Virus record (IMG/VR): IMGVR_UViG_3300021137_000001
Span: 248,001 to 312,000 of that record
Direction: 5' to 3' (one strand)
Length of the DNA stretch: 64,000 nt
How positions within the stretch are numbered: the first letter of the stretch is position 1; every line of letters begins with the position of its first letter. The notes under the pieces were generated by a model that saw nothing but the letters and a program-made list of their open reading frames with translations, was not told the DNA's origin and did no database searches. Positions 7,996 to 59,185 of this stretch are shown here, piece after piece. Made by a program: the position numbers and the translations under genes.

Positions 7996-8990
7996 TAGCA
8001 AAAGATAAATTAACAGTATTTGTTGGAGACATCGATGATGAGTTAGCAACATCTGCTAAATTACACGATTCAGCAGCATACTTGGTAGATTTTGCTAATT
8101 ATAACAAACAGCATACCGGTACTTGTTATACTAGTATAGCCGACTTGCCGGGACTTGTGGAATTTTCTGCTATATTAAGACAAGCATCTACTATAATATA
8201 TGTGCAACCAGAAAAATGGAATAATAATGAAACTAACAAATATTCATCGAAATATTGGACTGAATATTATTTAAATGTTTTTTCGTTAGATAAAACTAAA
8301 GAAGTAATTAATTTTTCCGAATCTATTAAATATCAACCAACAAATTTATCGATTATGCTAAATCTATTAGATAGCAGAAAAGATGAGCTATCTCAAATAT
8401 TATGGGTAGCTGGATGTTCTGTCACATACGGAGTTGGTGTAACTACAGAACAACGATACGGAAATTTACTAGCAAAACAATTAAATTTGCCGCTACGTAC
8501 ATTGGGGCGAGAATCATCATCAATTTCATATGCAGCTGATCAAATATTGCGGTCCGATATTAAGCAAGGGGACACAGTAGTATGGGGAATAACCAATCAA
8601 CTAAGAATAACATATTATGATCCAGCTAATCTAGAGTTAACACATATTACTACTAGTAACTATATTAAAGATCGTGCGCTCGATAAAATAATTAAATTAG
8701 ATTTCTTAGATAATCCTACCTTAATTTATTCAGCCGTAATAGCCATATACCAGGTAATTAATTTCTGTCAGAAAATTGGAGCAAAATTACTACTTGCTGG
8801 ATTATTAGTTGAACCCAAGTTAGCAGCATATTTTATAAATTTACCGGAATATATACATTTGTATAATTTTTACGGAGTAACATCATCTACATTATTCTTA
8901 GACACTGGGTCAGATAATATACATCCTGGTCCATTAACTCATCAATGGTATGCTGATAAAATATTAAACAAATTAAAGGAATTAGAATGA
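7992..8990 (+). CDS. SGNH/GDSL-like hydrolase or acyltransferase domain protein
   Basis: GCSVTYG (block I-like) and DNIHPG (DxxH block V). Confidence 0.6.
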   Translation: MIAKDKLTVFVGDIDDELATSAKLHDSAAYLVDFANYNKQHTGTCYTSIADLPGLVEFSAILRQASTIIYVQPEKWNNNETNKYSSKYWTEYYLNVFSLDKTKEVINFSESIKYQPTNLSIMLNLLDSRKDELSQILWVAGCSVTYGVGVTTEQRYGNLLAKQLNLPLRTLGRESSSISYAADQILRSDIKQGDTVVWGITNQLRITYYDPANLELTHITTSNYIKDRALDKIIKLDFLDNPTLIYSAVIAIYQVINFCQKIGAKLLLAGLLVEPKLAAYFINLPEYIHLYNFYGVTSSTLFLDTGSDNIHPGPLTHQWYADKILNKLKELE

Positions 8991-9970
8991 GAATATTAAT
9001 TACAGGTGGTGCAGGGTTTATTGGTCATAATGTAACTCGCATATTGGAAGAACAAGGACATACGTGCTTTGTTGTTGATAGCTTTACTAACTACGGATTC
9101 ATCCCACAACAAGAGATTAAATTTCTTAGTAAGGCGCGACTACAGCGTTTTAACTCGCAAGTTATAACTGCTGATATACGTGACACCACACGTATGTATA
9201 ATTTGTTTAAAGAATTACAACCAGATACTGTTATTCATCTTGCTAGTTTCCCTCGACAAAAAGTAGTAAGTGATGATCCGATTGCTGGGTCGGAAGTTAT
9301 GACTACTGGATTGATTAACTTACTGGAATGTTCAAAGCATAGTGGCGTTAAAAAGTTTGTGTACATTAGTAGCAGTATGGTCTACGGTGAATTTACTGAA
9401 GGATTGTTTGATGGCATTAACGAATATGTTGATTGCAAACCAATCGGACAGTATGGCATTATGAAGTATATGGGTGAGAAACTTGTAGCCGATTATACTC
9501 GTCGTGGTTGCTTTGCGCATACTATCATTCGCCCAAGTGCTGTATACGGACCTTGGGATGTCGAGGACAGAGTTGTTAGTAAGTTTATGCTTGCGGCAAT
9601 GCGTGATGAAGTATTAAAAGTTAAAGGTGCTAACGAAGTGCTAGACTTTACATACGTTGAAGATACTGCAATGGGCATTGCTCAAGCCGCTGTAAGTGAT
9701 AATGCAAACAATAAAATATACAATATCACACGTTCATCAGAAGCAGAATATACATTACTCGATGCCGCTAAACTTGCTATTAGTATTACAGGCAAAGGTA
9801 GCATCGATGTACAAGATAAAGACATTGCGTTTCCGTCGCGTGGTAGATTAAGTATTACAAGTGCAGTCATGGACTTTGGTTACAATCCTAAGGTCAATGT
9901 CGAGGATGGCTTTGCTCGTTATCATGAGTGGTTTAGTACAACTCCGTTTTGGATTAAAAAATTAAAATGA
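8987..9970 (+). CDS. NAD-dependent NDP-sugar epimerase/dehydratase
   Basis: TGGAGFIG, SSSMVYG, YGIMK (YxxxK), RPSAVYGP, DFTYVED. Confidence 0.93.
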   Translation: MRILITGGAGFIGHNVTRILEEQGHTCFVVDSFTNYGFIPQQEIKFLSKARLQRFNSQVITADIRDTTRMYNLFKELQPDTVIHLASFPRQKVVSDDPIAGSEVMTTGLINLLECSKHSGVKKFVYISSSMVYGEFTEGLFDGINEYVDCKPIGQYGIMKYMGEKLVADYTRRGCFAHTIIRPSAVYGPWDVEDRVVSKFMLAAMRDEVLKVKGANEVLDFTYVEDTAMGIAQAAVSDNANNKIYNITRSSEAEYTLLDAAKLAISITGKGSIDVQDKDIAFPSRGRLSITSAVMDFGYNPKVNVEDGFARYHEWFSTTPFWIKKLK

Positions 9971-11058
9971 TTCCGTTCTTTGGCATAGATAGACAATACA
10001 AAAATCTTCGCGAGGAGATACTTGATATTACTAATATTGTATATACGAGCGGGCAAGTTCTCGACGGCACATATACTAAAACGTTTGAGCAGACTATTGC
10101 TAAAATGACAGAGCGTAAGTATGCCATCGCTGTTAATAGTTGCACACAGGCGCTTATCTTTGCATTAAGAGCTATTGATCACTATTCATTATTTCGTAAA
10201 AACAAAGTACTAATCCCAGCGCAAAGTTTTGCCGCTACAGTCAATGTTGTTATTGAGGCGGGCTTTGAGCCTGTGTTCTGCGACGTTGATGCTGTTACTG
10301 GATTAATTAATCTCGATTCAATTCCAGTTGAGCCCGATGATATTGCGGCGGTTATGTACGTTAACTTGTTTGGTAATATTATCGACTACGATAAGTTACA
10401 GACTTATGTTACATTCTTTAATCAACATAAGATACCTGTAATCGAAGATGCTGCGCAATCGTTCGGTGCTTACTATCGTGGCGTTCCGAGTGGCAAGTTA
10501 GGTGACATTAGTTGTTTAAGTTTTGACCCAACAAAAAATCTTCCCAACTATGGAAGTGGCGGTATGATATTGTTAGATGACCCAGAGATTGCAATGTTAT
10601 GCTACAACTGGAGAGATAACGGAAAGATATCCGAACATAGTCTGTCTGGTACTAACAGCAAGATGAGTGAAGTTGATTGTGCGCAGATGTTAATTAAGTT
10701 AAAGTACTTTGATGAGTGGCAACAACGTCGTAAGAACATTGCAGAATACTATACAGAAGAATTAGATGGTCCGATTAAGTTAATCCCAATCGATAGTAAA
10801 GTAGAACATGCTTGGCATAAGTTTGTTATACACTATCCAGAGCGATCACGTCTATTCTCAGACTTGCAATCAATGAATATTGAAACTAAGATACATTATG
10901 TTGCACCATTACATCTAATGTCGCTAATTGGTGGGTATGAGGTATTGACTGGTGCTGAAGAATTTAGTAAGACTTGTTTAAGTTTGCCAATCTATCCTGA
11001 GATGACTGACGCAGAAGTTGAAGCAGTTGTTGATGCTATTAAAGAGTGTACTTGGTAG
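9967..11058 (+). CDS. DegT/DnrJ/EryC1/StrS PLP-dependent sugar aminotransferase
   Basis: AVNSCT, EDAAQSFG, SFDPTKNL (PLP lysine), GSGG, LSLPIYP. Confidence 0.93.
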   Translation: MIPFFGIDRQYKNLREEILDITNIVYTSGQVLDGTYTKTFEQTIAKMTERKYAIAVNSCTQALIFALRAIDHYSLFRKNKVLIPAQSFAATVNVVIEAGFEPVFCDVDAVTGLINLDSIPVEPDDIAAVMYVNLFGNIIDYDKLQTYVTFFNQHKIPVIEDAAQSFGAYYRGVPSGKLGDISCLSFDPTKNLPNYGSGGMILLDDPEIAMLCYNWRDNGKISEHSLSGTNSKMSEVDCAQMLIKLKYFDEWQQRRKNIAEYYTEELDGPIKLIPIDSKVEHAWHKFVIHYPERSRLFSDLQSMNIETKIHYVAPLHLMSLIGGYEVLTGAEEFSKTCLSLPIYPEMTDAEVEAVVDAIKECTW

Positions 11059-12367
11059 CGTAATACTGTTTTAGCCAATCCCATTCAAACGTAAGCATTA
11101 GTTTATCAGCATTACCATCAACTTCATCGTAAAATACAATTGCATCTTCTGCGCCTTTAATGCTCCATTCTGCATTTGCGCCCACTGCTTCATGTAACCA
11201 TTCATCGAGTCTGTAATCACTTTCGATATTACCAGTCTTACGCACATCATCACGTAGTTTAATACACTCTCTAAACGCAGTGCGCCATGTTAGTTCTGGT
11301 GTAGTGTTATAATGCGCTATAGCACTTACTACAGGTACTACAGCGTGTGCTTTGCTTAATGTAAAGTCAAGTCCACTGTCGTTTGTATCAAGTACTAATT
11401 GTTTGTTGTATGCAATCACACCCATGTGCCCATACTCTAATCCGTTTACTGGATTCTTACTGTGGAATATGTAATGCTTGGGCTCTTGTAAATAATCGGG
11501 TTGCCATTCCCAGTTAAAGTCAGGAACAACTTCTAACTTAGCAAACACCGCAAAGAACCACGGCGTTGTACTAAGTTCAGCAGCCGCTTTATATGCTTCG
11601 ACTCGCCCATTAACATTTTGTACACGTTTAATTCGAGTAAAGGTGCGAGCCGGATGAGTTTTGCCAAATATTGAAGTTACTAAGTGCCGATACCACTTTT
11701 CTGCGTCCGGTTCGCCGTTGCTGATATAGATAATATCAAGCAATTCTGGCTTCAAATAGTCTAATTTCTGCTTCGAAACGTGTGGATAATCGTAGATTTG
11801 AGTTACTAAATGCCCCATAATATCGCGGGGTGCTAACGATACGTTATTGCTTGCATTGAATGAGTAAAACACACGGTCTTTCCATAGTGGTGCGTCAAAT
11901 TTAGTACGTGCATTAACCCAAACGTATGGAGTATCGAAGTTATATGCTTTAAGTTCAGCAGTTATGTTCTCACTTGCACATTCTACCATGGCCCATGGTA
12001 GACGCATAACTCCATCTACATGCCAGTTAATATCCTTATACCATTCCAACATCTCAACATCTTTTTGTTTGTTAAATTCAGCAACGTTAACAAGAAATGT
12101 ATCACCAAACTCTTGTGTGCCGCTTGCCCAACAGTGTAGTTGATATGCTTCCCATGGTGCTGGCCGGTAATCAAAGTCAAAGTCATAGTAACTACAGCAA
12201 CTACTAATTACCCAAGCGTATTGTGTTCTACAACGTGTAATACAGCGTTTTAACGTGTCTAAATGATTGTTGTAGTAACGTACAACTTTTGCGTGAGGAT
12301 ATAGTGTACATAGGTTCTGCACGTTTTCATCGTGCCCGCCCATATCCATAATGAATACATCAAACAC
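11039..12367 (-). CDS. two-domain GT-A-like protein, paralog of 24498-25400 but lacking DxD
   Basis: RV.NVNG...AYKAAA, NPVNGLEYG, WRTAFRE shared with the 24498 ORF. Confidence 0.6.
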   Translation of the reverse strand: MFDVFIMDMGGHDENVQNLCTLYPHAKVVRYYNNHLDTLKRCITRCRTQYAWVISSCCSYYDFDFDYRPAPWEAYQLHCWASGTQEFGDTFLVNVAEFNKQKDVEMLEWYKDINWHVDGVMRLPWAMVECASENITAELKAYNFDTPYVWVNARTKFDAPLWKDRVFYSFNASNNVSLAPRDIMGHLVTQIYDYPHVSKQKLDYLKPELLDIIYISNGEPDAEKWYRHLVTSIFGKTHPARTFTRIKRVQNVNGRVEAYKAAAELSTTPWFFAVFAKLEVVPDFNWEWQPDYLQEPKHYIFHSKNPVNGLEYGHMGVIAYNKQLVLDTNDSGLDFTLSKAHAVVPVVSAIAHYNTTPELTWRTAFRECIKLRDDVRKTGNIESDYRLDEWLHEAVGANAEWSIKGAEDAIVFYDEVDGNADKLMLTFEWDWLKQYYATKYTL

Positions 12368-12860
12368 TAACTTTCTCTACTGTTAATCCGCACTCTACTA
12401 GAAACGCAAGCCCTATTGTATCGCGATATGATTCAGCATAGTACACTTCTGTAATGCCAGCTTGATAAATTGTTTTTGCACAAGTCAAGCAAGGGCAATG
12501 AGTAACAAAGATTGCGGCTCCTTTGCCGCCGCCATTTAGTTTTGCAAGTTTTGCCACTGCGTTCGACTCTGCGTGAAGCACAGTTGATTTTGTTTTCAAT
12601 CTGTATCTGAGTTGGTCTGCGGCAACAAATGGCCACTGTGACTCTATTTCATCTGAGTCAAGCCAACCACCAGCATCTTGTGCCATGTATTCCGGTTCTT
12701 CGCATACGTTATCCCATCCGCTGGGTTGACCGTTGTATCCAATAGAGATAATTGCATCATCTTTAACAATAATTGCGCCAACTTGTAAGCGTACAGCACT
12801 TGAACATTCAGCATAATTGTATGCTGTTTTCATGTGCGCCAATTTCATTTTATGTTTCAT
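12360..12860 (-). CDS. cd: dCMP deaminase
   Basis: VGAIIV, GYNG, HAESNA, PCLTC zinc motifs. Confidence 0.93.
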   Translation of the reverse strand: MKHKMKLAHMKTAYNYAECSSAVRLQVGAIIVKDDAIISIGYNGQPSGWDNVCEEPEYMAQDAGGWLDSDEIESQWPFVAADQLRYRLKTKSTVLHAESNAVAKLAKLNGGGKGAAIFVTHCPCLTCAKTIYQAGITEVYYAESYRDTIGLAFLVECGLTVEKVSV

Positions 12861-13263
12861 TTATATCCTTAGCAATCATATCTGCCCAACGTTCAGCATC
12901 TTGTTCTGTTACACGTATATCGTATGACTCTGGTGGTTCAAATAGTCGGTTTGTATCTTCAAATCGCCCTTCATTAATTGTGTCAACCCATATAACATAG
13001 TCGGCATCAAATATATCACGTATCTCTTGAGTAGGTGCAACAAAGTCGCATATACTATGTTGCCACCCATCGAACGCATCCATTGCTGCAAGTTGACTCA
13101 TTCTACTTGCTTGTCGCAGTCTACCTTCTATGCTAAAGTCCATATCGTTAAATTGTTTTCTTATCTCATCTGCATTGTGCCAAGTTGCATTTAATCTTTT
13201 TTGCAATGCTTCTGCTAGTGTTGTTTTACCTGCACCCGGCAAGCCCATTATTAGTATGTTCAT
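12850..13263 (-). CDS. adenylylsulfate-kinase-like P-loop kinase (short)
   Basis: GLPGAGKTT; NADEIR..F...DFS.EGR.RQ resembles CysC; 137 aa. Confidence 0.7.
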   Translation of the reverse strand: MNILIMGLPGAGKTTLAEALQKRLNATWHNADEIRKQFNDMDFSIEGRLRQASRMSQLAAMDAFDGWQHSICDFVAPTQEIRDIFDADYVIWVDTINEGRFEDTNRLFEPPESYDIRVTEQDAERWADMIAKDINET

Positions 13264-14756
13264 GATAACACTTTAACTCCGTATAGTTCTTCAAATCGAT
13301 CTGCATCAGCACGATCATTTACCATTGGTTCACCACGTACATTTAAACTTGTATTAAGCAACATCGGGCAACCTGTCCAAGTGTACCATAAGCATAATAG
13401 TTCACGTATGCCACTACCATCTCGCGGCACTGTCTGTACACGACTTGTACCATCAACATGTATTATAGCAGGAAATTCATTGGGACGCAAGCACTTTGCA
13501 GTTGTTTGCATATACGGGCTAGATTTAAATCCGTTAGGCATTTCAAAATACTCATCAGCAAACTCCTCCAGTATTATAGGAGCGAATGGGCGAAACTGTT
13601 GTCTACGTTTAATTAAGTTTACAGCATCTTTAATGTCAGTGCCACGTGGGTCAGCTAATAAACTTCTATTACCTAATGCTCTAGGACCAAACTCTGCACG
13701 TCCACTAGCAACACCAACAATCTTATTTGCCATTAACTCGGATACAACATCGGTGCAAGGATAAGGGCCAGGAATATCATGCCCAAGAAAAGCATTAGTC
13801 CAATTAAGTTTCCCACCATGCGCTAATGCTGCCGCTCCAAGGCTGCTACCAGCATCACCAGGATTAGGCATAATCCAAATGTTATCAAAGTATTCTCCTA
13901 AATCTCTATTAGCACTACAGTTAAGCGCAACACCGCCAGAGTATACTAAATTACTGTTAGGTGCGAGCATACTTGCTTTATACATTATATTATGTATTAG
14001 TTCTTCAGTAAGTGTTTGTGCTGCATTAGCAATCTCAAAGTCATTCCATTTAACTTTCATATCATTAGCGGGCAGCCCAATATGTAGATTGTGTTTTAAT
14101 GTTAGATTAAACTCATTGTTAACTAGCCAATGAGAAAGTTGATCGCTTAATCGGTGTGTTTTTTTCTTTGCCCAGCCAGCCATGCCCATTAATATGTATT
14201 CTTCATCCAGTGGACGTAAACCAACTTCTTTAGTAAATGCACTATACATCAAGCCGATACTATGCGGATATTTTTGTCCCCATACCTTATTATATTGTGC
14301 CCGACCGTTTTTGTAATATGCACTCCATATGCTTATTGTATCCCATTCACCAATTGCATCAATTACAACCACAGTTGCATCATCAAATGTACTTGTTTGA
14401 AAGCCTGCAGCCGCATGTGATAGATGATGATTGTATGTACTAATTGGGAGATGATATATCGGAGAGTTGGGTACCATCTTTTTAAGCATACCACGTACAG
14501 TCCACGGCGTTTTTAATTCACTGTATTGTCCAGCATAAAGCTGACGTGTCTTCTTAACCCACGGTCTTTCATAGTATGCAATTTGATCGGGCGAGCCGTA
14601 TGTTAATGCATCTGCTATTAGCGCACTGTTTAAGTTTGCGTCATGTTTAATCAGGCTATAGCGTTCAGCATGACCTGCAAAGACAATATCATCGCCTTTG
14701 ATTAATGTTACTGCTGCGTCATGAAACCCAGCACTAATTCCTAATATGTTGTGCAT
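13260..14756 (-). CDS. carbamoyltransferase (NodU/CmcH family)
   Basis: GFHDAA, ERYS, HHLSHA, DAIGE, GGVALN, PGDAG, EFGPRALGNRS, FRPFAP, LLNTSLN. Confidence 0.95.
   Translation of the reverse strand: MHNILGISAGFHDAAVTLIKGDDIVFAGHAERYSLIKHDANLNSALIADALTYGSPDQIAYYERPWVKKTRQLYAGQYSELKTPWTVRGMLKKMVPNSPIYHLPISTYNHHLSHAAAGFQTSTFDDATVVVIDAIGEWDTISIWSAYYKNGRAQYNKVWGQKYPHSIGLMYSAFTKEVGLRPLDEEYILMGMAGWAKKKTHRLSDQLSHWLVNNEFNLTLKHNLHIGLPANDMKVKWNDFEIANAAQTLTEELIHNIMYKASMLAPNSNLVYSGGVALNCSANRDLGEYFDNIWIMPNPGDAGSSLGAAALAHGGKLNWTNAFLGHDIPGPYPCTDVVSELMANKIVGVASGRAEFGPRALGNRSLLADPRGTDIKDAVNLIKRRQQFRPFAPIILEEFADEYFEMPNGFKSSPYMQTTAKCLRPNEFPAIIHVDGTSRVQTVPRDGSGIRELLCLWYTWTGCPMLLNTSLNVRGEPMVNDRADADRFEELYGVKVLS
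14740..14750. repeat. 11-bp direct repeat CCTAATATGTT, copy 1 (core of a ~30-bp degenerate duplication)
   Basis: Identical to 15564-15574; the two copies flank the HNH gene. Confidence 0.8.
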
Positions 14757-14785
14757 TTTGATAAATAAATTTAAAGGTGATTAAC

Positions 14786-15568
14786 ATGATATTTATTGAA
14801 AACAAATATACTAAAATTTATTATAGCATAATTGATTCTGCAAAGTCAAGAACTTTATCGCAGGAAACATACACAGAAAAACATCACACAATTCCCAAAT
14901 CACTTGGGGGCGACAATTCAACAGAAAACTTAGCGTCCTTGACTGCAAGAGAGCATTTTATATGCCATTGGTTGCTAACTAAAATGACTTCGGGCACATC
15001 AAAGCGTTCAATGGTTTTTGCACTAAGAATGTTAAAGGCTATGTCCACTAAGCACCAAAGATATGAAAGTTGTGTTACTGCCAAAGTGTATGAATCTATT
15101 AGAAAAGAGCACTCTGTATACCTTAGTAATATGCTTAAAGGGAGAATTGTTAGCGACGAAACTAGACACAAAATGTCTATTGCGGCAAAGAAAAAGACGC
15201 AAAATTCTTTTAAAGGGCATTCTCACAGTGAAGAAACAAAGGCTGCAATTGGGGATGCTAATAGGGGCAAACAAAGAACTGCCGAACAAAAAGAAAAAAT
15301 GTCGGCAGCACTTAGAGACATGTCAGTGAATCGTAGAGAAAAATTATCAGTTTATAAAAAGAATCATCCATTAACTGAGGATTCACTGAACAAAATTCGT
15401 AAATTATATGTCGTTACATTTCCAAACTGTACTACTGAGCAGACTAATAATTTAGCAGAATTTTGTAAAAACCACAAACTAAGTTTACCAGCAATGCGTG
15501 ATCAGGTTGCTAAAGGTAAACAAGAACATCACAATGGATACTGTGTTAAATCCATCCCAAAGACCTAA
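14786..15568 (+). CDS. HNH homing endonuclease (Mob-like) with NUMOD3-like repeats, antisense to the operon
   Basis: EKHHTIPKSLGG.N...NL..LTAREHFICH; repeats SDETRHKMS, HSEETKAAIG; TAAATA at 14762 and SD AAGGTG upstream. Confidence 0.88.
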   Translation: MIFIENKYTKIYYSIIDSAKSRTLSQETYTEKHHTIPKSLGGDNSTENLASLTAREHFICHWLLTKMTSGTSKRSMVFALRMLKAMSTKHQRYESCVTAKVYESIRKEHSVYLSNMLKGRIVSDETRHKMSIAAKKKTQNSFKGHSHSEETKAAIGDANRGKQRTAEQKEKMSAALRDMSVNRREKLSVYKKNHPLTEDSLNKIRKLYVVTFPNCTTEQTNNLAEFCKNHKLSLPAMRDQVAKGKQEHHNGYCVKSIPKT

Positions 15569-16184
15569 TATGTTCATAAATTTTATCCGCTACTATTGCA
15601 TGCCCTTCTTCTAAAAAATGACCGCCCGATCCCTGGGGTGTGCCGTATGTCCATTCAGCCATAGTTCCGATTGGCCACCCTATAAAGTTCGCTGAATCAA
15701 TTTGGTCTCGAATCGGTGCAAACTCGTCCGACCAACGCAGCATAATATTGTTGCCATATGCATCGAGCATAAGCAATTTCTTGCCTTGTTGTCGCACATA
15801 AGATTGTAATAAAATTATATTTGTCAGATATTGCTTATACAAATATTTGTCATTGTAATGTATTGTAATGTATTTTAATAATTCTGTTCGGTATGCAAGG
15901 TCTTTAGTAAATGTTAGTCCACGATATCCGGGCCATGTATCAAATATTCCATGCTCATCAGCAAATTCAATACGTGCAAAATGACTCCATGCAACAATTA
16001 TTAAATCATAATCTGCTGCCTGTTCAACTATTGTCCGTACCATACTAGTATTTCCCACACCGGGTTTCCCTAAATTAGTTAACTCACATGATAATTTAGT
16101 TTGTAATACATACGGCCATGCTTGCTTAACATCCGTTAGTTCGTCACCATATGTAAAGCTATCACCAACTGTTAATACTCTCAC
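15546..16184 (-). CDS. SGNH/GDSL-like protein
   Basis: GDSFTYG, G.GN, GHFLEEGH. Confidence 0.75.
   Translation of the reverse strand: MRVLTVGDSFTYGDELTDVKQAWPYVLQTKLSCELTNLGKPGVGNTSMVRTIVEQAADYDLIIVAWSHFARIEFADEHGIFDTWPGYRGLTFTKDLAYRTELLKYITIHYNDKYLYKQYLTNIILLQSYVRQQGKKLLMLDAYGNNIMLRWSDEFAPIRDQIDSANFIGWPIGTMAEWTYGTPQGSGGHFLEEGHAIVADKIYEHIRSLGWI
15564..15574. repeat. 11-bp direct repeat CCTAATATGTT, copy 2
   Basis: Identical to 14740-14750. Confidence 0.8.
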
Positions 16185-16282
16185 TTGTAAATAAATGGAT
16201 CGCGCTTACGTAACTCTTTTAATTTCTTACGATAGCGTAATTCCATCTTGACACGATTAATTATGTTTAGTAACCAATTCAT
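16181..16282 (-). CDS. 33-aa basic peptide MNWLLNIINRVKMELRYRKKLKELRKRDPFIYK
   Basis: Read by hand; fills the 72-bp gap between the two SGNH genes; its TGA overlaps the GTG start of the next gene; not in ORF track. Confidence 0.6.
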   Translation of the reverse strand: MNWLLNIINRVKMELRYRKKLKELRKRDPFIYK

Positions 16283-16955
16283 TGAACTTCTCCGTTATTA
16301 ATGTTGCTGCGATTTTGTGTGCATCGTCGAGTGGATGTAGTTGTACTCCAACTTTATACTTATTTTCAACTGCCCATCGATGGAAGCCAATTGGTGCACG
16401 AGTTTCATTTTCCTGCATACTGGCGGCAAACCAAAACCAGTTTTCCCAATTAATTTGATTATATAAGTTATCTAGACCAGCATCTCGGCGCCGGATATAG
16501 TTTTCGTGTTGGTAGAAATGATTATCAGCAGTCATAAACATATATGGTATCTTGTTTATTATACAATACTGCTGTAGAAAGACTATTTCTTTGAGTATAG
16601 AGTAAATTTCATAGTATTCACTATCACCAGCATGTTTAAAATAACTTTCACTAAATTCTTTAGCGTTAGTATGCCAACTGTTTATACTAATCCACTCATC
16701 GTTAATTCTAAATTCAGCACGTTGTGGGTAAGTCCATTCAACTAACAAAAACTTATCATCCTCTATTTTACTTAACGCATCAATTGCCATTCTACTAATT
16801 GCATTATTGGCATTGCCAGGGTGTGCCGTGCAAACATACTCCATATTAGATTGTTGTGCTAACAATGCCGGAAAAGTTTGTTTGCTATAGACGGCCCGGC
16901 AGTCTGCAAGCTCACTACCCCATATATAACTATCCCCTGCAGCTACTAAAATCAT
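16257..16955 (-). CDS. SGNH/GDSL-like protein
   Basis: GDSYIWG, PGNAN, LHPLDDAH. Confidence 0.72.
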   Translation of the reverse strand: MILVAAGDSYIWGSELADCRAVYSKQTFPALLAQQSNMEYVCTAHPGNANNAISRMAIDALSKIEDDKFLLVEWTYPQRAEFRINDEWISINSWHTNAKEFSESYFKHAGDSEYYEIYSILKEIVFLQQYCIINKIPYMFMTADNHFYQHENYIRRRDAGLDNLYNQINWENWFWFAASMQENETRAPIGFHRWAVENKYKVGVQLHPLDDAHKIAATLITEKFNELVTKHN

Positions 16956-16960
16956 AAAAT

Positions 16961-18052
16961 TCAGGCGATCTGATCAATTTGTTGATCAGCATAATCACTG
17001 TCTGACCAATCATATTCATATGTAACTGATGCATCCTTGGTTCTTATACTGTACACATTTAGATGTTCGCCTAACTGCAACCAAATATTTTTATACTTGT
17101 CGTTGCCAAAACTTTTAATTAAATCAACTTGCCCAACTTGCGGATGACCGATGGTTAATGTCTTATCATCCGGATCAAATCCATTATTCGATAACCATTG
17201 TTTAAAATCTTGCAAGGTTTTTATTTGCCATTGATATTTTCCTGGATTGTTTGACCATTCGATATCAAAATCGCCGGCGGCTTCAGTTTGTGAACGTAAT
17301 GTAGTGGTAGTCAATTCATCGATTCTATGGTTAAGGGGATTAGCAACTTCGTCACGAAATACTTCAAAATGATGTTTGCCAACTGCTTTGTTAACTCCAG
17401 CATATACACCGCCTAGCGGACGATTTAAACTTTCAATACCGAACAGTTCGAAATCATTTTCATCTAATACAAATCTCGGTGCACTTAACCAACACATTAA
17501 TTGACTGGGTCTACGCCACTCTGGGGCATGAACAGCTTTACGCATGCTCAATATAAGAGATTCATATTCATGACATAATAAGTTTAATTGTCGAATATGC
17601 CATCGAACTCGGCTGTCTGCTCGGTTATAAAATTCAGACATGCGGCCGCTAACTCCTTGTAAATCTTCAAAATATCTATGCAGATGATTCATCTTATCAT
17701 GTACTACACCACCAATTTCTTCAGTACCGTTGATTACTCCAGGAGATATAGTATTTTCCACAGTAAAATGATCGTTAATCTGATATCCAAGATTTGCTTG
17801 ATTAATTGCCGCGATTGATAGATTAATTTGATTAGTTATATATTCTGCATTTCTGTCAGATTCAATAAATCCGTGAAAGCAATAATTTTTCTCAAGATGA
17901 TAGTTTTGTTTGATTAATGTATTAAGCGCCGATAGCCATTTACGACTAAGAGAGTTATCATATACATCAATGTATATAGTAAGTATGTCGTTAGTTTTGT
18001 TATTTTTTAGATCAATTTCAATTTGATCAAGCAATGTTTTTATACCACTCAT
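16961..18052 (-). CDS. hypothetical protein in the modification cluster
   Basis: 363-aa ORF, no recognisable motif. Confidence 0.7.
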   Translation of the reverse strand: MSGIKTLLDQIEIDLKNNKTNDILTIYIDVYDNSLSRKWLSALNTLIKQNYHLEKNYCFHGFIESDRNAEYITNQINLSIAAINQANLGYQINDHFTVENTISPGVINGTEEIGGVVHDKMNHLHRYFEDLQGVSGRMSEFYNRADSRVRWHIRQLNLLCHEYESLILSMRKAVHAPEWRRPSQLMCWLSAPRFVLDENDFELFGIESLNRPLGGVYAGVNKAVGKHHFEVFRDEVANPLNHRIDELTTTTLRSQTEAAGDFDIEWSNNPGKYQWQIKTLQDFKQWLSNNGFDPDDKTLTIGHPQVGQVDLIKSFGNDKYKNIWLQLGEHLNVYSIRTKDASVTYEYDWSDSDYADQQIDQIA

Positions 18053-19316
18053 ATACTGCTGGTCTCTCTTTTAATATGTCTGCTAGTGTAAGCGTATCAT
18101 TACGTATACTTTCTAATTGTAACACACGTTGCTTACCTTTGTCAAGCTCTTTCTTATATGTATCAGGCCATTGCTCGTCAAACGTTGGTCGTGATTTTAA
18201 CTGTACAAGTACATCTTGCATAGCGCCGGAAGTCTGTGGAATTAGTTCGTCTAACCATGGATGTAGTAAGTCGCGTGGTAGAGCAAGGGGACTAAGGATA
18301 ATGTCGGGGCTAAAGCTGAAAACAACTTTAGCCAAGATGTCTACATTTTCTTCTGAAGCAAGGTTGGTAATGTTGATGATTTCGAACATACCGGGCAATG
18401 TGAGAGTGAAGTCGATTCGCATTTGTCGACGATGAGTAGCTGTTTTAATTCCTTCACGGAAGTTTTCAAGCCATTGATTATAATCAAGTCCTGTTCTAAT
18501 ATATTCTCCAATTGCTCCCGTTCCATCAAGGCTGGCACAGATTTGCCAGTCGCGTAACCCAGATAAAATATCGCTGAAGAGATTGATACCACGATAGTTG
18601 ACGCGGCTAAGATTAGTATTGTACCTTGCGTAAGCATGCTTGCCATCTCCTAAATCAATAATGCGTTTCATATAACGCCAATGTTGTTCGTACATTAGTG
18701 GTTCACCACCAACCCAATATACTTCTTCAACTTGATGATTCTCGACTGCTTGAGCAAACTCCTGTTCTATTTGACTATCTTGAAATGCTGTGATCTCTTG
18801 TTTTACTTCTGGTTTCATCCAATTATTCTTTGGGTTGTTCCAATTAATCATATTATGTTGTCGTTGTTCAGTTTCCCAAGCACTCGATAACATATCTCCG
18901 CACATGCGACACTTAAAATTACATAAGTTACTAAATCTATAGTCCCAACTTACAGGGCGCATAGTTGTGTAACCTGTTGTATCTGTTGTCTCTTGTACTT
19001 GTAAATACTTATTACCAAACATAGAATCAAAATAACTACGGTAAACTGATGTGTTCAATAGCTTGTCATTACACACTTCGCATTCAGGAAGTGTTTCCCC
19101 TGCCATCATACGCCGACGTACTGACTTCATATGCTCACTGTTCCAGTGTTCATCTAAGGTAATTGGAATGTATTTGCCTGTGCCAGCTCGAGTATCGATA
19201 TACTGTTCAAAGTTTTGCGCAGGCTCGCGACTAGCACAGCATATACGTCTTTCAGTTTGTGGTGAAAGATATGTGTGACACCATGCGGCAAGGCAAAGTG
19301 TACTAGGCTTCAACAT
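18027..19316 (-). CDS. radical SAM protein with N-terminal SPASM/twitch-like Cys cluster (rSAM-5)
   Basis: CNFKCRMC, GGEP; N-terminal C..W.H...ICC ... CEVC. Confidence 0.9.
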   Translation of the reverse strand: MLKPSTLCLAAWCHTYLSPQTERRICCASREPAQNFEQYIDTRAGTGKYIPITLDEHWNSEHMKSVRRRMMAGETLPECEVCNDKLLNTSVYRSYFDSMFGNKYLQVQETTDTTGYTTMRPVSWDYRFSNLCNFKCRMCGDMLSSAWETEQRQHNMINWNNPKNNWMKPEVKQEITAFQDSQIEQEFAQAVENHQVEEVYWVGGEPLMYEQHWRYMKRIIDLGDGKHAYARYNTNLSRVNYRGINLFSDILSGLRDWQICASLDGTGAIGEYIRTGLDYNQWLENFREGIKTATHRRQMRIDFTLTLPGMFEIINITNLASEENVDILAKVVFSFSPDIILSPLALPRDLLHPWLDELIPQTSGAMQDVLVQLKSRPTFDEQWPDTYKKELDKGKQRVLQLESIRNDTLTLADILKERPAVYEWYKNIA

Positions 19317-20502
19317 AACCCATTGCTAATGCAATTTCCTTATGTGTTGTTAGCATCGATTCTTTTCTAAATTCATCAGTCTGTTGCATTTTACGTAAGA
19401 ATTCTGTGCCATCACTGCCGTTGCCATTTTCGATAAACTTAATGATACGCATAATTTCTGCTTTGTGTTTACTGCTAAACTCATGTGTGCGCAATCTATT
19501 AATAACAAGTTCTTTTGCGGCTGGTGTCATTCTAGCAATACACATGTGCCACGGGTCGTGTAACATATTAAAGTAAACATTATCAAATGTTTGTTGCGCA
19601 ATCCAATCACATATCTCGGGTAAGTAATAAACGTTTTGTATGTTTATTGTTGTACATAAATGTATAGTTAATTTCTTACTTCTTAGTTCAATAAACTTAG
19701 CTATGTTTGCTTGTACTTCGTCCCACTTAGCAAGATAGCGTTCATATTCAAAACGTGCGCCCATATTGTCTATACTAAATGCAATCTCAACGTGCTTAAA
19801 TTCTTTCCACACATCGGCAAAATCTGGGAAGACAGTGCCGTTTGTATTGTAATGTATTTCAATATCTTTACTATAACCATGCTCTACTGCATAACGCAAT
19901 AGTTCAAAGTGTTCTTTAATTAAGAATGGCTCACCTCCCGTAAATTCAAAGTATTTAATGTTTGGTAGCAGTGCTCGTAAGTTATCCCAAAATTGTGGAT
20001 TCTCACGCGGCCATGCGCCTTGCTTAAGAAATGTATATGCTAAATGGTCTTTCTTTTTAACTTCTGGTAAGTATGCCATTTCTTCTTGTGCCCACGGACT
20101 GCTACTCCAGCTACCGCATATACGACATTTAAGATTACAAATATTGCCGAGCTTTAAGTCAATGAACCAAAGTTGATCAGGGTTAGTATTACTAAAGTCA
20201 ACTTTATCATAGTATTCTTTAAGACGTATGCGACTGTTAATGCGCTTGCTTACTCTGCCTGCCGCCTCTTCGTCCCAACATCTTTTGCATGTTGCCGGTT
20301 GCTTACCAAGTAAAAACTCTTGACGCAGGTCTTGCATATATCCACTTTGATATATTTGTGTAAGTGTGTGTTTGTTTAAATCGTACTTGACACCAGCTGC
20401 ATCTGTTATCTCATCTATAGCAAGACAACAAGGTCGACTTGTACCAATTGGACTAGTTTCAATACTAATCCAAGGTAGCATGCATATTTTACTTGACAAC
20501 AT
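19303..20502 (-). CDS. radical SAM protein with N-terminal SPASM/twitch-like Cys cluster (rSAM-4)
   Basis: CNLKCRIC, TGGEP; CMLPW...PCC ... CKRCW. Confidence 0.9.
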   Translation of the reverse strand: MLSSKICMLPWISIETSPIGTSRPCCLAIDEITDAAGVKYDLNKHTLTQIYQSGYMQDLRQEFLLGKQPATCKRCWDEEAAGRVSKRINSRIRLKEYYDKVDFSNTNPDQLWFIDLKLGNICNLKCRICGSWSSSPWAQEEMAYLPEVKKKDHLAYTFLKQGAWPRENPQFWDNLRALLPNIKYFEFTGGEPFLIKEHFELLRYAVEHGYSKDIEIHYNTNGTVFPDFADVWKEFKHVEIAFSIDNMGARFEYERYLAKWDEVQANIAKFIELRSKKLTIHLCTTINIQNVYYLPEICDWIAQQTFDNVYFNMLHDPWHMCIARMTPAAKELVINRLRTHEFSSKHKAEIMRIIKFIENGNGSDGTEFLRKMQQTDEFRKESMLTTHKEIALAMGYVEA

Positions 20503-58460: not shown

Positions 58461-58473
58461 CCGCAAATTATTT

Positions 58474-58525
58474 TATCTGCCAGTCGCCCATAACTAAATA
58501 CATTTACAGGGGATTGGCAGATATG
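58474..58525 (+). promoter_or_regulatory. late promoter inside SD/ATG-sequestering hairpin
   Basis: TATCTGCCAGTC-g-CCC pairs with GGG-GATTGGCAGATA; TAAATA at 58495-500 in the loop; ATG at 58523. Confidence 0.8.
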
Positions 58526-59185
58526 AAATACAAAAAAGATTACTATGGTTATGTATATGAATGGATAAATTCCACTAATAATATGAAATATATCGGATCG
58601 CATTACGGAGCAGTCGATGATTATTATAAAGGATCCGGCAAAGATTTTATGGTAGCATATAAAAATAACCCACAACACTTTACTATGAGAGTATTAGAAT
58701 ATGTTTCTGAAAACAATAAAAAATTAGTATTAGAAACAGAAAAAAAATGGCTTGATACAGTAGTAAATATTAAAGATGATCCAACATATTATAATCTCAA
58801 TAATGATGCGACAGGCGGATTTGGGTATTTAGATGAATCTCATATCGTTAAACGAGCAGAAACATTAAAGAAGAAACACGCTATCCACGGATTAAGTACC
58901 GAAGAAATACAATCATATAAGCAAAAAATACAAACCAGACTCGATAGAATAGCAACTACTGGGTTTACCGATAAAGAAAAAGAACAACATGCAAAATACG
59001 GAATTAAATTACAAGTCACCTTACCCTCAGGAGAAGTACGAATATATAATTCCATCGGGGCTGCCGAACGTGAGTTAAAACTTAACATTAAGTATGGATT
59101 AAAAATATGTGCCAAAAAACTTGACTTCAAAGGGTACATTCTAGTAAAATTAAATGAACCACTAATCGATTGTAGGAAAAAATGA
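58523..59185 (+). CDS. GIY-YIG (Seg-like) homing endonuclease
   Basis: GYVYEW.N..N.MKYIGSH, Y.GSG, E..WL, YYNLNN.A.GG; start moved to ATG 58523. Confidence 0.85.
   Translation: MKYKKDYYGYVYEWINSTNNMKYIGSHYGAVDDYYKGSGKDFMVAYKNNPQHFTMRVLEYVSENNKKLVLETEKKWLDTVVNIKDDPTYYNLNNDATGGFGYLDESHIVKRAETLKKKHAIHGLSTEEIQSYKQKIQTRLDRIATTGFTDKEKEQHAKYGIKLQVTLPSGEVRIYNSIGAAERELKLNIKYGLKICAKKLDFKGYILVKLNEPLIDCRKK

What the first reader, a model, noticed from the sequence alone, without database searches (positions are those of the whole stretch)
14721..15577. Antisense HNH insertion duplicated a dual-coded gene overlap; each copy kept one reading frame
Seen (minus strand): upstream copy ATG AAC ATA TTA GGT CTT TGG GAT GGA TTT AAC and downstream copy (ATG CAC) AAC ATA TTA GGA ATT AGT GCT GGG TTT CAT share an 11-bp exact core and about 22/30 nt. 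The upstream copy now encodes the SGNH C-terminus (YEHIRSLGWI*), while its other frame reads a decayed MNILGLWDGF. The downstream copy encodes the carbamoyltransferase start (NILGISAGFH), while its SGNH frame hits TAG. The HNH stop codon lies inside the duplicated core. Inference: insertion separated an overlapping gene pair by duplication, and the two copies then specialised.
Basis: partly seen in the sequence, partly recalled or inferred. Interest (0 to 1): 0.75.

Follow-up and report, generated by a model that had tools for sequence, protein, structure and literature searches.

The report
Homing-endonuclease cassette splitting overlapping genes
In this freshwater jumbo phage, a selfish nuclease gene sits inside what is a 35-base two-frame overlap between two genes in related phages, and it carries spare copies of both gene ends so both genes survive; this shows how a mobile element can colonise, and undo, a gene overlap.

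Summary
It becomes decisive once relatives are compared.

- **Ancestral state.** At least 23 distinct related phage loci have one 35-nt dual-coded overlap, ATGAACATATTAGGCATCTCGGCTGGGTTTCATGA. It reads ..YEHIRHLGWVS* in the GDSL-like DUF6071 gene and MNILGISAGFHD in the carbamoyltransferase gene.
- **The window.** An 831-nt cassette (14733..15563) replaces the central 7 nt, CATCTCG. The cassette is a recoded hydrolase tail, an antisense HNH-NUMOD3 endonuclease gene, and a new carbamoyltransferase head.

The causal story needs correcting. This insertion did not make the duplication.

- **An old mobile unit.** The cassette occupies the same site in at least nine other cassette lineages. Their nucleases are 42-68% identical and come in HNH and GIY-YIG-like forms that share one DNA-binding domain.
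- **Horizontal spread.** The cassette moves between backgrounds with very short conversion tracts, as filled/empty pairs show.
- **Decay.** One relative holds an internally deleted endonuclease gene.
Two HNH-less relatives have the two copies abutting (TAA|ATG).

Whether those two relatives are scars of endonuclease loss or surviving empty alleles is unresolved. So is whether the first event was a duplication or an insertion. This is a new variant of a known kind.

The parts
15546..16184 (-). DUF6071 / GDSL-like ('SGNH') hydrolase gene, 212 aa, ending ..ADKIYEHIRSLGWI*
   Evidence: ORF. Pfam DUF6071 E 3.7e-7 and sub-threshold GDSL hits. Orthologues lie directly upstream of the carbamoyltransferase in 16 IMG/VR loci.
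15564..15577 (-). Left arm: the original carbamoyltransferase start, ATGAACATATTAGG. Here it codes only for hydrolase residues (Y)EHIR. It contains the HNH stop codon (15566..15568, plus strand).
   Evidence: Identical or near-identical to the first 14 nt of the overlap in undivided relatives. In run X1 a relative's contig joins 15564 to 14732 through CATCTCG.
15546..15563 (-). Tail: TCTTTGGGATGGATTTAA, a recoded copy of the hydrolase end (SLGWI*, ancestral HLGWVS*). In the carbamoyltransferase frame it is decayed to LWDGF. Its antisense strand encodes most of the last HNH codons (V)KSIPK(T).
   Evidence: The same 18 nt occur in L018, L028 and L191 in different hydrolase backgrounds.
14786..15568 (+). 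Free-standing homing endonuclease gene, 260 aa: HNH, NUMOD3 and a C-terminal DNA-binding domain. It is antisense to both neighbours and overlaps the hydrolase 3' end by 23 nt.
   Evidence: Pfam NUMOD3 E 9e-8 and HNH E 5e-4. PHROG 655 'homing endonuclease' E 5.6e-41. Best PDB fold match is I-HmuI 1u3e. Start at ATG 14786 matches all 260-aa orthologues; the ORF listing gives GTG 14777.
15377..15568 (+). The 3' 192 nt of the HNH gene (DNA-binding domain) is 99% identical to the 3' end of a 207-aa HNH gene of another phage (L191). The rest of the gene is unrelated at DNA level, so this is a chimeric endonuclease gene.
   Evidence: blastn; protein alignment (P0011 against P0001).
14757..14785 (.). 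Spacer between the endonuclease start and the new carbamoyltransferase start. It contains TTGATAAATA (14758..14767, plus strand; TATTTATCAA on the gene strand). TATTTATC is present at the left end of all ten cassettes, and TATTTATCAA in nine of them.
14733..14756 (-). Head: the new carbamoyltransferase start, ATG CAC AAC ATA TTA GGA ATT AGT (MHNILGIS). It is recoded at synonymous sites, and its hydrolase frame is closed by TAG.
   Evidence: Heads of the same kind occur in all cassettes (MxHILG, MNSILG, MSSILG, MNILG).
13260..14756 (-). NodU/CmcH-type ('Nol-like') carbamoyltransferase gene, 498 aa
   Evidence: Pfam Carbam_trans_N and Carbam_trans_C; PHROG 1601 E 1e-95; 207 related loci in IMG/VR.
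14733..15563 (.). The whole cassette (831 nt) that stands in place of the 7 nt CATCTCG of the undivided overlap
   Evidence: Comparison with undivided loci. Empty-site contig in run X1: joint 14732|CGAGATG|15564.
14820..14849 (-). Sigma-70-like promoter match (TTGACT, 18 nt, TATAAT with upstream TG; 11/12) inside the 5' end of the HNH gene, pointing at the carbamoyltransferase. This is a candidate only.
   Evidence: Consensus scan. Total matches in the region did not exceed shuffles, and conservation in other cassettes was not tested.

Best explanation
The repeat marks the two ends of a site-specific homing-endonuclease cassette lodged in the middle of a dual-coded gene overlap.

In the ancestral and still common arrangement, the last 35 nt of the DUF6071/GDSL-like hydrolase gene are also the first 35 nt of the carbamoyltransferase gene. 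Because two frames constrain it, this stretch is a roughly 40-nt island of near-invariant DNA in otherwise diverged phages. That makes it a good endonuclease target (inferred).

The cassette has three parts:
1. An 18-nt tail that re-encodes the hydrolase end.
2. An antisense endonuclease gene whose last codons are written on the opposite strand of that tail and the adjoining arm.
3. A head that re-encodes the carbamoyltransferase start.

The cassette sits between the arms ATGAACATATTAGG and GCTGGGTTTCATGA, so both host genes stay whole and the overlap is dissolved. Each copy is now selected in one frame only and has drifted in the other (shown).

The cassette spreads between phages together with its tail and head. 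The likely route is cleavage of the undivided site followed by repair from a cassette-bearing genome during co-infection. The distribution pattern is shown; cleavage is inferred.

The cassette also swaps nuclease modules and decays. The window holds an intact but chimeric 260-aa HNH version. The 11-nt exact core is a local feature of this genome's head. It is either retained or restored by conversion from the upstream copy or from an undivided relative (inferred).
For: 1. The single 35-nt overlap occurs in at least 23 distinct loci. Majority-base frequency is 0.88-0.98 across it, against 0.51-0.80 (mostly below 0.75) in the flanks.
2. Endonuclease genes occupy the same site with the same geometry in other phages. 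They overlap the hydrolase end antisense by 23 nt (17 nt in L222), and TATTTATC precedes the new start in all of them. These are L182-190 and L198 (260 aa, 64-68% identical), L191-194 and L222 (207 aa) and L223 (210 aa).
3. In all of them the upstream copy keeps YEHI[RK]xxGW[VIG]* but reads ..LWDG.. or similar in the other frame. The head keeps ILG[IV]SAG.
4. Filled/empty pair: L191 (with cassette) is 92.6% identical to L021 (undivided overlap) over 1135 nt. Identity is mostly 90-100% per 40-nt bin along the hydrolase region and falls to 78% only in the last 40 nt.
5. Same cassette in different backgrounds:
   - L191 against L028 is perfect over the 32-nt upstream copy, then 55-75%.
   - The window against L018 is perfect for 81 nt, then about 60%.
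   - A 2025 run holds a contig 99.2% identical over 14655-15436 with a carbamoyltransferase body only about 82% identical, and another contig identical up to 15577 and then unlike.
6. On the carbamoyltransferase tree, the 260-aa cassettes fall in at least 4 separate places next to undivided lineages.
7. A variant with a GIY-YIG-like N-terminus and the same DNA-binding domain sits at the same point of the carbamoyltransferase gene in phages that have a different upstream gene. It leaves an orphan ATGAATATACTAGG.
8. Decay: the L028/L029 remnant equals the L191 gene minus nt 42-491, an in-frame deletion.
9. An undivided-site relative co-occurs with this phage in run X1.
10. The structure is found in 14 contigs, including assemblies from several different metagenome samples, so it is not an assembly artefact.
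Against: - No cleavage or homing has been observed, and the recognition site is inferred only from conservation and position.
- HNH scores just under Pfam's cut-off (20.5 against 21.4 bits).
- Horizontal spread could in principle be ordinary homologous recombination between co-infecting phages without help from the nuclease.
- The two HNH-less contigs with abutting copies show that the split state does not need an endonuclease gene to persist.
- Most cassette contexts come from metagenome contigs, some of them short (1.9-5 kb).
Confidence: 0.8

Rival explanations
1. Duplication first. A 35-nt tandem duplication of exactly the overlap separated the two genes without any endonuclease, and an endonuclease gene later settled in the neutral stop|start junction. 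The HNH-less abutting contigs (L002/L018, L007/L024) are survivors, or long-lived empty alleles, of that state.
For: - In those contigs the two copies are exactly 35 nt out of register with no spacer (TAA|ATG). They correspond codon for codon to a perfect duplication of ATG..TGA.
- Excising the insert from the 260-aa cassettes gives the same 35-nt period.
- This state is abundant and stable: at least 16 contigs from many samples, never with an endonuclease gene.
- A tandem duplication is a simple one-step origin, whereas endonuclease cleavage does not produce 20-35-nt target duplications (established knowledge of HNH and GIY-YIG enzymes).
Against: - The tail of these contigs (18/18 nt in L018, 17/18 in L024) and the head (18/18 nt from AAT on) match those of present-day cassettes (window, L191), although cassettes as a whole are deeply diverged.
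- Their head has the extra codon, which looks derived, because three of the 207-aa cassettes keep a start at the original position.
- Endonuclease decay is directly seen in L028.
- Trees cannot order the states; AU tests gave p 0.09-0.25.
Confidence: 0.4
2. Insertion first. One ancient insertion of an endonuclease gene into the overlap came with duplication of the overlap. The HNH-less abutting contigs are then scars left by complete loss of the endonuclease gene.
For: - The split state is otherwise always linked to an endonuclease gene or its remnant.
- An intermediate stage of decay exists, L028.
- The flanks of the abutting contigs are nested in cassette diversity.
- The 81-nt perfect tract between the window and L018 looks like a conversion tract.
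- A 2-nt microhomology (AA) at TTTAA|...CAAA|ATG would give exactly the observed junction (read).
Against: - No known endonuclease mechanism makes such a duplication.
- An exact zero-spacer deletion must be assumed.
- On the protein tree the window pairs with one of the two abutting contigs, which would need two losses, though support is weak.
Confidence: 0.35
3. The two stretches resemble each other by chance or because of AT-rich composition.
For: Only 22/30 identity. Such matches exist elsewhere in a 64-kb window when all pairs are considered.
Against: The local test gives about 5e-4. Both stretches align to one undivided sequence in at least 23 distinct relatives, each in the frame it still encodes.
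Confidence: 0.01
4. The insert is a self-splicing intron carrying an antisense endonuclease gene. Splicing ATGAACATATTAGG to AATTAGTGC.. would restore MNILGISAG.
For: Joining the left arm to the sequence after the second core would give a perfect carbamoyltransferase start (read).
Against: - No Rfam family matches 14500..15800 at E<=1 on either strand.
- Every cassette has its own in-frame ATG head.
- The hydrolase stop lies inside the would-be intron.
- Other cassettes lack the repeated core.
Confidence: 0.02

Closest known systems
Mobile endonuclease ORFs (mORFs) of fungal mitochondria that carry a substitute gene end (Allomyces macrogynus atp6; Glomus atp6, atp9, cox2, nad3; PMC3630166)
   Same: An endonuclease gene travels with a foreign copy of the end of the host gene it interrupts. 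The result is a duplicated gene end on either side of the endonuclease gene, and the two copies differ mostly at synonymous sites.
   Different: - Here the host is a phage.
- The element carries ends for two genes at once (a 3' end and a 5' end) because it sits in a dual-coded overlap.
- The displaced native pieces do not become pseudogenes: each stays in use for the other gene.
- The endonuclease gene is antisense, and most of its last seven codons are written on the opposite strand of the carried hydrolase tail.
Free-standing HNH homing endonucleases of T4-like and SPO1-like phages (MobE, I-HmuI)
   Same: HNH plus NUMOD3 plus a C-terminal DNA-binding module, a free-standing gene between or within conserved genes, presence/absence polymorphism among related phages, and flanking markers that travel with the gene (PMC2790892 for MobE, seen only as title and abstract).
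   Different: MobE-type genes are described as sitting between genes, as far as I know. No case found here involves a dual-coded overlap or carried replacement gene ends.
mobE insertion that splits nrdA of Aeromonas phage Aeh1 into two genes (recalled from the literature; not retrieved here)
   Same: An endonuclease gene inserted inside coding sequence, with the host function kept.
   Different: In that case one gene is cut into two pieces with no duplication. Here two overlapping genes are separated by duplicating the shared segment.
Target-site duplications of transposable elements
   Same: Direct repeats of host sequence flank an inserted mobile gene.
   Different: The repeats here are not made anew at each insertion. 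The identical tail and head occur in different genomes and so move with the element. They are 20-35 nt long, diverged and under protein-coding selection.

Membership tests
Free-standing HNH homing endonuclease gene (I-HmuI / MobE kind) | HNH nuclease motif | tested here: inconclusive
   Pfam HNH E 5e-4 at 20.5 bits, against a cut-off of 21.4. The motif HH..N..H is visible and conserved in orthologues. PHROG 655 'homing endonuclease' E 5.6e-41. Best PDB fold hit is I-HmuI 1u3e, E 5e-3, TM 0.21/0.30.
Free-standing HNH homing endonuclease gene (I-HmuI / MobE kind) | Modular DNA-binding region (NUMOD3 and a C-terminal helix-turn-helix-like module) | tested here: met
   NUMOD3 E 9e-8, above the cut-off. 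The profile of A1 matches the I-HmuI C-terminal half weakly, E 0.06.
Free-standing HNH homing endonuclease gene (I-HmuI / MobE kind) | Not inside an intron or intein | tested here: met
   No Rfam match in 14500..15800. The gene has its own start and is antisense to both neighbours.
Free-standing HNH homing endonuclease gene (I-HmuI / MobE kind) | Present or absent at one fixed site among related genomes, with flanking markers co-inherited | tested here: met
   Filled/empty pair L191/L021. The same cassette occurs in different backgrounds, and cassettes are scattered on the carbamoyltransferase tree.
Free-standing HNH homing endonuclease gene (I-HmuI / MobE kind) | Cuts or nicks the endonuclease-less allele near the insertion site and spares its own genome | not testable with these tools
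   Only indirect evidence: the empty site is a conserved 35-40-nt island, and both copies in cassette genomes differ from it in the central bases.
Endonuclease element carrying substitute gene ends (mitochondrial mORF kind) | A duplicated host-gene end on each side of the endonuclease gene | tested here: met
   Tail against right arm, and head against left arm.
Endonuclease element carrying substitute gene ends (mitochondrial mORF kind) | The carried copy is foreign to the background and moves with the endonuclease gene | tested here: met
   Identical tail and near-identical head in unrelated hydrolase and carbamoyltransferase backgrounds. The 2025 run shows the same cassette in another background.
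Endonuclease element carrying substitute gene ends (mitochondrial mORF kind) | The displaced native end is left unused and decays | tested here: not met
   The left arm still encodes hydrolase residues and the right arm still encodes carbamoyltransferase residues. Only the unused frame of each copy decays. In the context without the hydrolase gene (L195), the 14-nt orphan start is unused.
Transposon-type target-site duplication | The repeat is generated from the recipient's own sequence at each insertion | tested here: not met
   The tail (18/18 nt) is shared by the window, L018, L028 and L191 although the adjoining hydrolase genes are only 55-75% identical.
Group I intron with endonuclease gene | Conserved intron RNA core | tested here: not met
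   No Rfam hit at E<=1.

The most novel reading that the evidence does not exclude
A family of homing-endonuclease cassettes is specialised to live inside a dual-coded gene overlap. It brings replacement ends for both genes. When the nuclease gene later decays and is lost, it leaves the two genes permanently un-overlapped, as in the abutting TAA|ATG state of L002 and L007. Selfish nucleases would then be a mechanism that removes gene overlaps in phage genomes. This locus would also be a natural series in which one sequence can be seen before, during and after release from two-frame constraint.
Probability: 0.45. Interest if true: 0.75.

Novelty: new variant of a known kind. Interest (0 to 1): 0.62.

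Why it matters
- **A paradox for selfish nucleases.** Overlapping reading frames are among the most constrained, and therefore most conserved, stretches of a phage genome. That should make them attractive targets, yet inserting there should be lethal to two genes at once.
- **One solution.** At this locus the element carries recoded spare ends for both genes. It even writes its own last codons on the back of one of them.
- **A resolved example of frame-wise specialisation.** The ancestor (one sequence, two frames) and the descendants (two sequences, one frame each) both still exist in nature. The relaxation of each frame can be read directly.
- **A near-complete endonuclease life cycle at a single site.** The stages seen are empty, invaded, module-swapped (HNH with or without NUMOD3, and GIY-YIG-like on one DNA-binding domain), internally deleted, and possibly lost.
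- **A practical lead.** The enzymes are candidates for nucleases specific to a roughly 35-bp conserved site.

Tried and rejected
- **Phage GenBank collection.** It has no close relative of the region, only 72-76% matches of about 110 nt in the NUMOD3 part of other homing endonucleases, plus a short match of the carbamoyltransferase gene to an unannotated marine virus record.
- **IMG/VR peptide-seeded search with the HNH protein.** It found only the phage's own contig plus relatives at 48% identity or less at other sites. The orthologues at this site were reached only through the large protein collection.
- **DNA pattern scans.** Scans for the derived tail (IMG/VR, then JGI metagenomes) returned only five known contigs and the window's own 329-kb contig. 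A scan for the back-translated DNA-binding motif (IMG/VR) returned three of the same contigs.
- **Ordering the abutting state and the HNH state by phylogeny.**
  - The protein tree groups the window with L018 and L024, at SH-aLRT 92 only.
  - The DNA tree is a polytomy, and AU tests do not reject any pairing (p 0.09-0.25).
  - Sliding identity on the carbamoyltransferase side is uninformative, because the first 90 nt are conserved in all lineages.
- **Filled variant of the abutting-copy phages.** Exact look-ups of their hydrolase proteins found none.
- **Simple deletion between ATGGA repeats of an L191-type cassette.** It does not reproduce the abutting junction (worked by hand).
- **Intron hypothesis.** No Rfam match.
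- **GIY-YIG assignment of P0025.** It rests on visible motifs and very weak PDB sequence hits (E 0.6-1.1), and Pfam does not call it.
- **TTGATAAATA.** It occurs once in the window, no more than chance would give. Its interest lies only in its conservation across cassettes.
- **Protein-DNA complex prediction.** Not run. I judged it unable to discriminate sequence specificity.


Full report
**1. What is in the window**

On the minus strand there are two genes. A 212-aa DUF6071/GDSL-like hydrolase gene (15546..16184) ends ..ADKIYEHIRSLGWI*. A 498-aa NodU/CmcH-type carbamoyltransferase gene (13260..14756) starts MHNILGISAGFHD. Between them, on the plus strand, lies a 260-aa ORF (ATG 14786..15568) with an HNH motif and a NUMOD3 motif.

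- They share the 11-nt core AACATATTAGG and 22 of 30 aligned bases.
- The upstream one is read in the hydrolase frame. In the other frame it gives MNILGLWDGFN.
- The downstream one is read in the carbamoyltransferase frame. In the hydrolase frame it hits TAG.
- The HNH stop codon TAA (15566..15568) is the complement of TTA inside the upstream core.

Random pairs of 60-nt segments at the same spacing reach 22/30 in 2 of 4000 trials. Taken alone, the repeat is only suggestive.

The window is part of a complete 329,321-bp jumbo phage genome with terminal repeats. That genome carries at least seven HNH-NUMOD3 homologues in total. The same arrangement is found in 14 contigs, including assemblies from several different metagenome samples, so it is not an assembly artefact.

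**2. The ancestral state**

Searches of IMG/VR with the hydrolase and the carbamoyltransferase gave 16 and 80 loci. In at least 23 distinct loci the two genes overlap by 35 nt: ATGAACATATTAGGCATCTCGGCTGGGTTTCATGA. This reads ..YEHIRHLGWVS* in one frame and MNILGISAGFHD in the other. Some of these hydrolases are only 32% identical to the window's.

Across these loci the majority base has a frequency of 0.88-0.98 over the overlap, against 0.51-0.80 in the flanks, mostly below 0.75. The overlap is thus an island of about 40 nearly invariant bases.

**3. Anatomy of the insert**

Laid against the undivided sequence, the window keeps the left arm ATGAACATATTAGG (15577..15564) and the right arm GCTGGGTTTCATGA.. 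(14732 downward). It replaces the 7 nt CATCTCG by 831 nt (14733..15563). A contig of a relative in run X1, which also holds this phage, shows the empty site directly: it joins 14732 to 15564 through CGAGATG, the complement of CATCTCG.

The 831 nt consist of four pieces:
- **Tail**, TCTTTGGGATGGATTTAA (SLGWI*).
- **Endonuclease gene**, antisense. Most of its last seven codons are written on the opposite strand of the tail, and the final codon and the stop run into the left arm. This makes a new 23-nt antisense overlap.
- **Spacer** of 29 nt containing TATTTATCAAA.
- **Head**, ATG CAC AAC ATA TTA GGA ATT AGT.

The tail is a paralogue of the right arm and the head is a paralogue of the left arm. 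The order is therefore L-R'-[endonuclease]-L'-R, a duplication of the overlap with the endonuclease gene at the junction.

**4. The cassette is old, diverse and site-specific**

The large protein collection holds 260-aa orthologues that are 64-68% identical. Every one whose context could be read lies between the same two genes. All have the same spacing: 29 nt from the carbamoyltransferase start, a 23-nt overlap with the hydrolase end, and 836 nt between homologous points of the two copies. These are L182-190 and L198.

Shorter versions without NUMOD3 occupy the same place. They are 207-210 aa long: L191-194, L222 and L223.

A 223-aa version has a GIY-YIG-like N-terminus, NUMOD3 and the same C-terminal 65 residues. 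It sits at the same point of the carbamoyltransferase gene in phages whose upstream gene is a different one. It leaves an orphan ATGAATATACTAGG and brings a new head, MSSILG. The GIY-YIG call rests on visible motifs and very weak hits.

The shared C-terminal domain resembles the DNA-binding half of I-HmuI weakly.

In all nine other hydrolase-context cassettes the upstream copy keeps YEHI[RK]xxGW[VIG]* and is scrambled in the other frame. The head keeps ILG[IV]SAG.

**5. The cassette moves with its tail and head**

- **Filled/empty pair.** L191 (207-aa endonuclease) and L021 (undivided overlap) are 92.6% identical over 1135 nt. Identity is mostly 90-100% per 40-nt bin along the hydrolase region and drops to 78% only in the last 40 nt.
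- **Same cassette, different backgrounds.**
  - L191 and L028 are identical over exactly the 32-nt upstream copy and 55-75% identical beyond it.
  - The window shares 32-39 identical nt with L028 and L191, and 81 nt with L018. Identity then falls to about 60%.
  - In a 2025 run one contig is 99.2% identical to the window over 14655-15436, but only about 82% identical in the carbamoyltransferase body. Another contig is identical up to 15577 and unlike beyond.
- **Tree.** On the carbamoyltransferase tree the 260-aa cassettes fall in at least four places, each beside undivided lineages.
- **Chimera.** The 3' 192 nt of the window's gene are 99% identical to the L191 gene, while the rest is unrelated at DNA level.

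These patterns are what homing with short co-conversion tracts gives. Cleavage itself is inferred, not shown.

**6. Decay and the HNH-less split state**

L028 and L029 hold a remnant equal to the L191 gene minus nt 42-491. This in-frame deletion removes the nuclease domain.

L002/L018 and L007/L024 have no endonuclease gene at all, yet both copies are there and abut..TGG ATT TAA|ATG AAA AAT ATT CTC GGA ATT AGT. This state is common in nature, with at least 16 contigs, and was never found with an endonuclease gene.

There are two readings of this state.
- **Scar of complete loss.**
  - The L018 tail is identical to that of the window and L191 (18/18 nt; L024 differs by one base).
  - The head from AAT on is identical to that of L191 (18/18 nt).
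  - The extra codon looks derived.
  - Decay is seen next door in L028.
- **Surviving or empty allele of a duplication that came first.**
  - The two copies are exactly 35 nt out of register with no spacer.
  - They match a perfect tandem duplication of the overlap codon for codon.
  - No known HNH or GIY-YIG mechanism makes duplications of this length.

Trees do not decide between these. At DNA level the window, L018, L024 and L019 form a polytomy, and AU tests give p 0.09-0.25.

**7. Rivals excluded**

Chance is excluded by the relatives. An intron is unlikely, for four reasons:
- Rfam finds no match.
- Each cassette has its own start codon.
- The hydrolase stop lies inside the would-be intron.
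- Other cassettes lack the repeated core.

A transposon-type target duplication is excluded because the same tail and head occur in different genomes.

**8. Comparison with what is known**

The gene is a free-standing homing endonuclease of the I-HmuI/MobE kind by domain content and behaviour. Its activity is untested.

The closest described arrangement is the mitochondrial mobile endonuclease ORF that carries a substitute C-terminus of the gene it interrupts, as in Allomyces atp6 and Glomus atp6, atp9, cox2 and nad3 (PMC3630166). This case differs in four ways:
- the host is a phage;
- two gene ends are carried because the site is a dual-coded overlap;
- the displaced pieces stay in use;
- the endonuclease shares its last codons antisense with the carried tail.

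Full-text searches found no report of an endonuclease cassette in a gene overlap or at a phage carbamoyltransferase gene.

**9. Verdict**

However, the duplication is an inherited part of an old mobile cassette and was not made by this insertion. The first step of its origin is unresolved.

Noticed in passing
window 14820..14849 (minus strand): Strong sigma-70-like promoter match (TTGACT, 18 nt, TG-n-TATAAT; 11/12) inside the 5' end of the HNH gene, pointing at the carbamoyltransferase start 64 nt downstream. The cassette may supply the transcription signal that the carbamoyltransferase lost when it was cut off from the hydrolase gene.
   Followed up: partly
window 14758..14767 (plus strand), and the left end of cassettes L182-L198 and L223: TTGATAAATA (TATTTATCAA on the gene strand) lies just upstream of the new carbamoyltransferase start in nine of the ten cassettes (L222 has TATTTATCTA). 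These span HNH 260, HNH 207/210 and GIY-YIG-like types, although the rest of the spacer differs. It resembles the T4 late-promoter box TATAAATA on the endonuclease strand. Its function is unknown.
   Followed up: partly
window 15377..15568: The DNA-binding end of the window's HNH gene is 99% identical to that of a 207-aa HNH gene (L191), while the nuclease half is unrelated at DNA level. This points to module exchange between endonuclease genes competing for one site.
   Followed up: yes
L195-L197 (ENA contigs), endonuclease at L195:644-1315: A 223-aa protein with a GIY-YIG-like N-terminus, NUMOD3 and the same C-terminal domain sits at the same point of the carbamoyltransferase gene in phages that have a different upstream gene (..RDPFIYK*). 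It leaves a 14-nt orphan copy of the gene start.
   Followed up: partly
L028:4725-5010 and L029 (IMG/VR 3300042384_000288, 3300044633_000491): A 58-codon remnant ORF, equal to the L191 endonuclease gene with an in-frame loss of 150 codons. It keeps the first 13-14 and last 44 codons.
   Followed up: yes
L053-L055, L057: A variant of the undivided state. The hydrolase ends ..KHIGN* at the TAG inside GGAATTAGT, and the carbamoyltransferase starts further upstream (MKSQNILG). The GGAATTAGT of the window's head therefore also exists as a natural overlap variant.
   Followed up: no
L222:2231-2500: In the most divergent cassette, an extra stretch of about 270 nt with a 45-aa ORF lies between the endonuclease gene and the carbamoyltransferase. 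The latter has its own AAGGA ribosome-binding site there.
   Followed up: no
window 16257..16955 (minus strand): The next gene upstream also starts with a GDS motif (MILVAAGDSYIWGSEL) but matches no Pfam family. It may be a second, diverged GDSL-like hydrolase in tandem.
   Followed up: no
whole genome G000 (for example C1:177731-178393, 58465-59067, 313651-314157, 323526-324035, 242351-242959, 8528-9106): At least six further HNH-NUMOD3 paralogues (38-48% identical) are scattered over the 329-kb genome, all outside the window. The phage is rich in homing endonuclease genes.
   Followed up: no
window 9967..20502: The locus lies in a cluster of sugar- or nucleotide-modification-type genes: a DegT-like aminotransferase-type ORF, dCMP deaminase, an APS-kinase-like P-loop protein, the carbamoyltransferase and two radical-SAM-like ORFs. 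The cluster is syntenic in the relatives.
   Followed up: no
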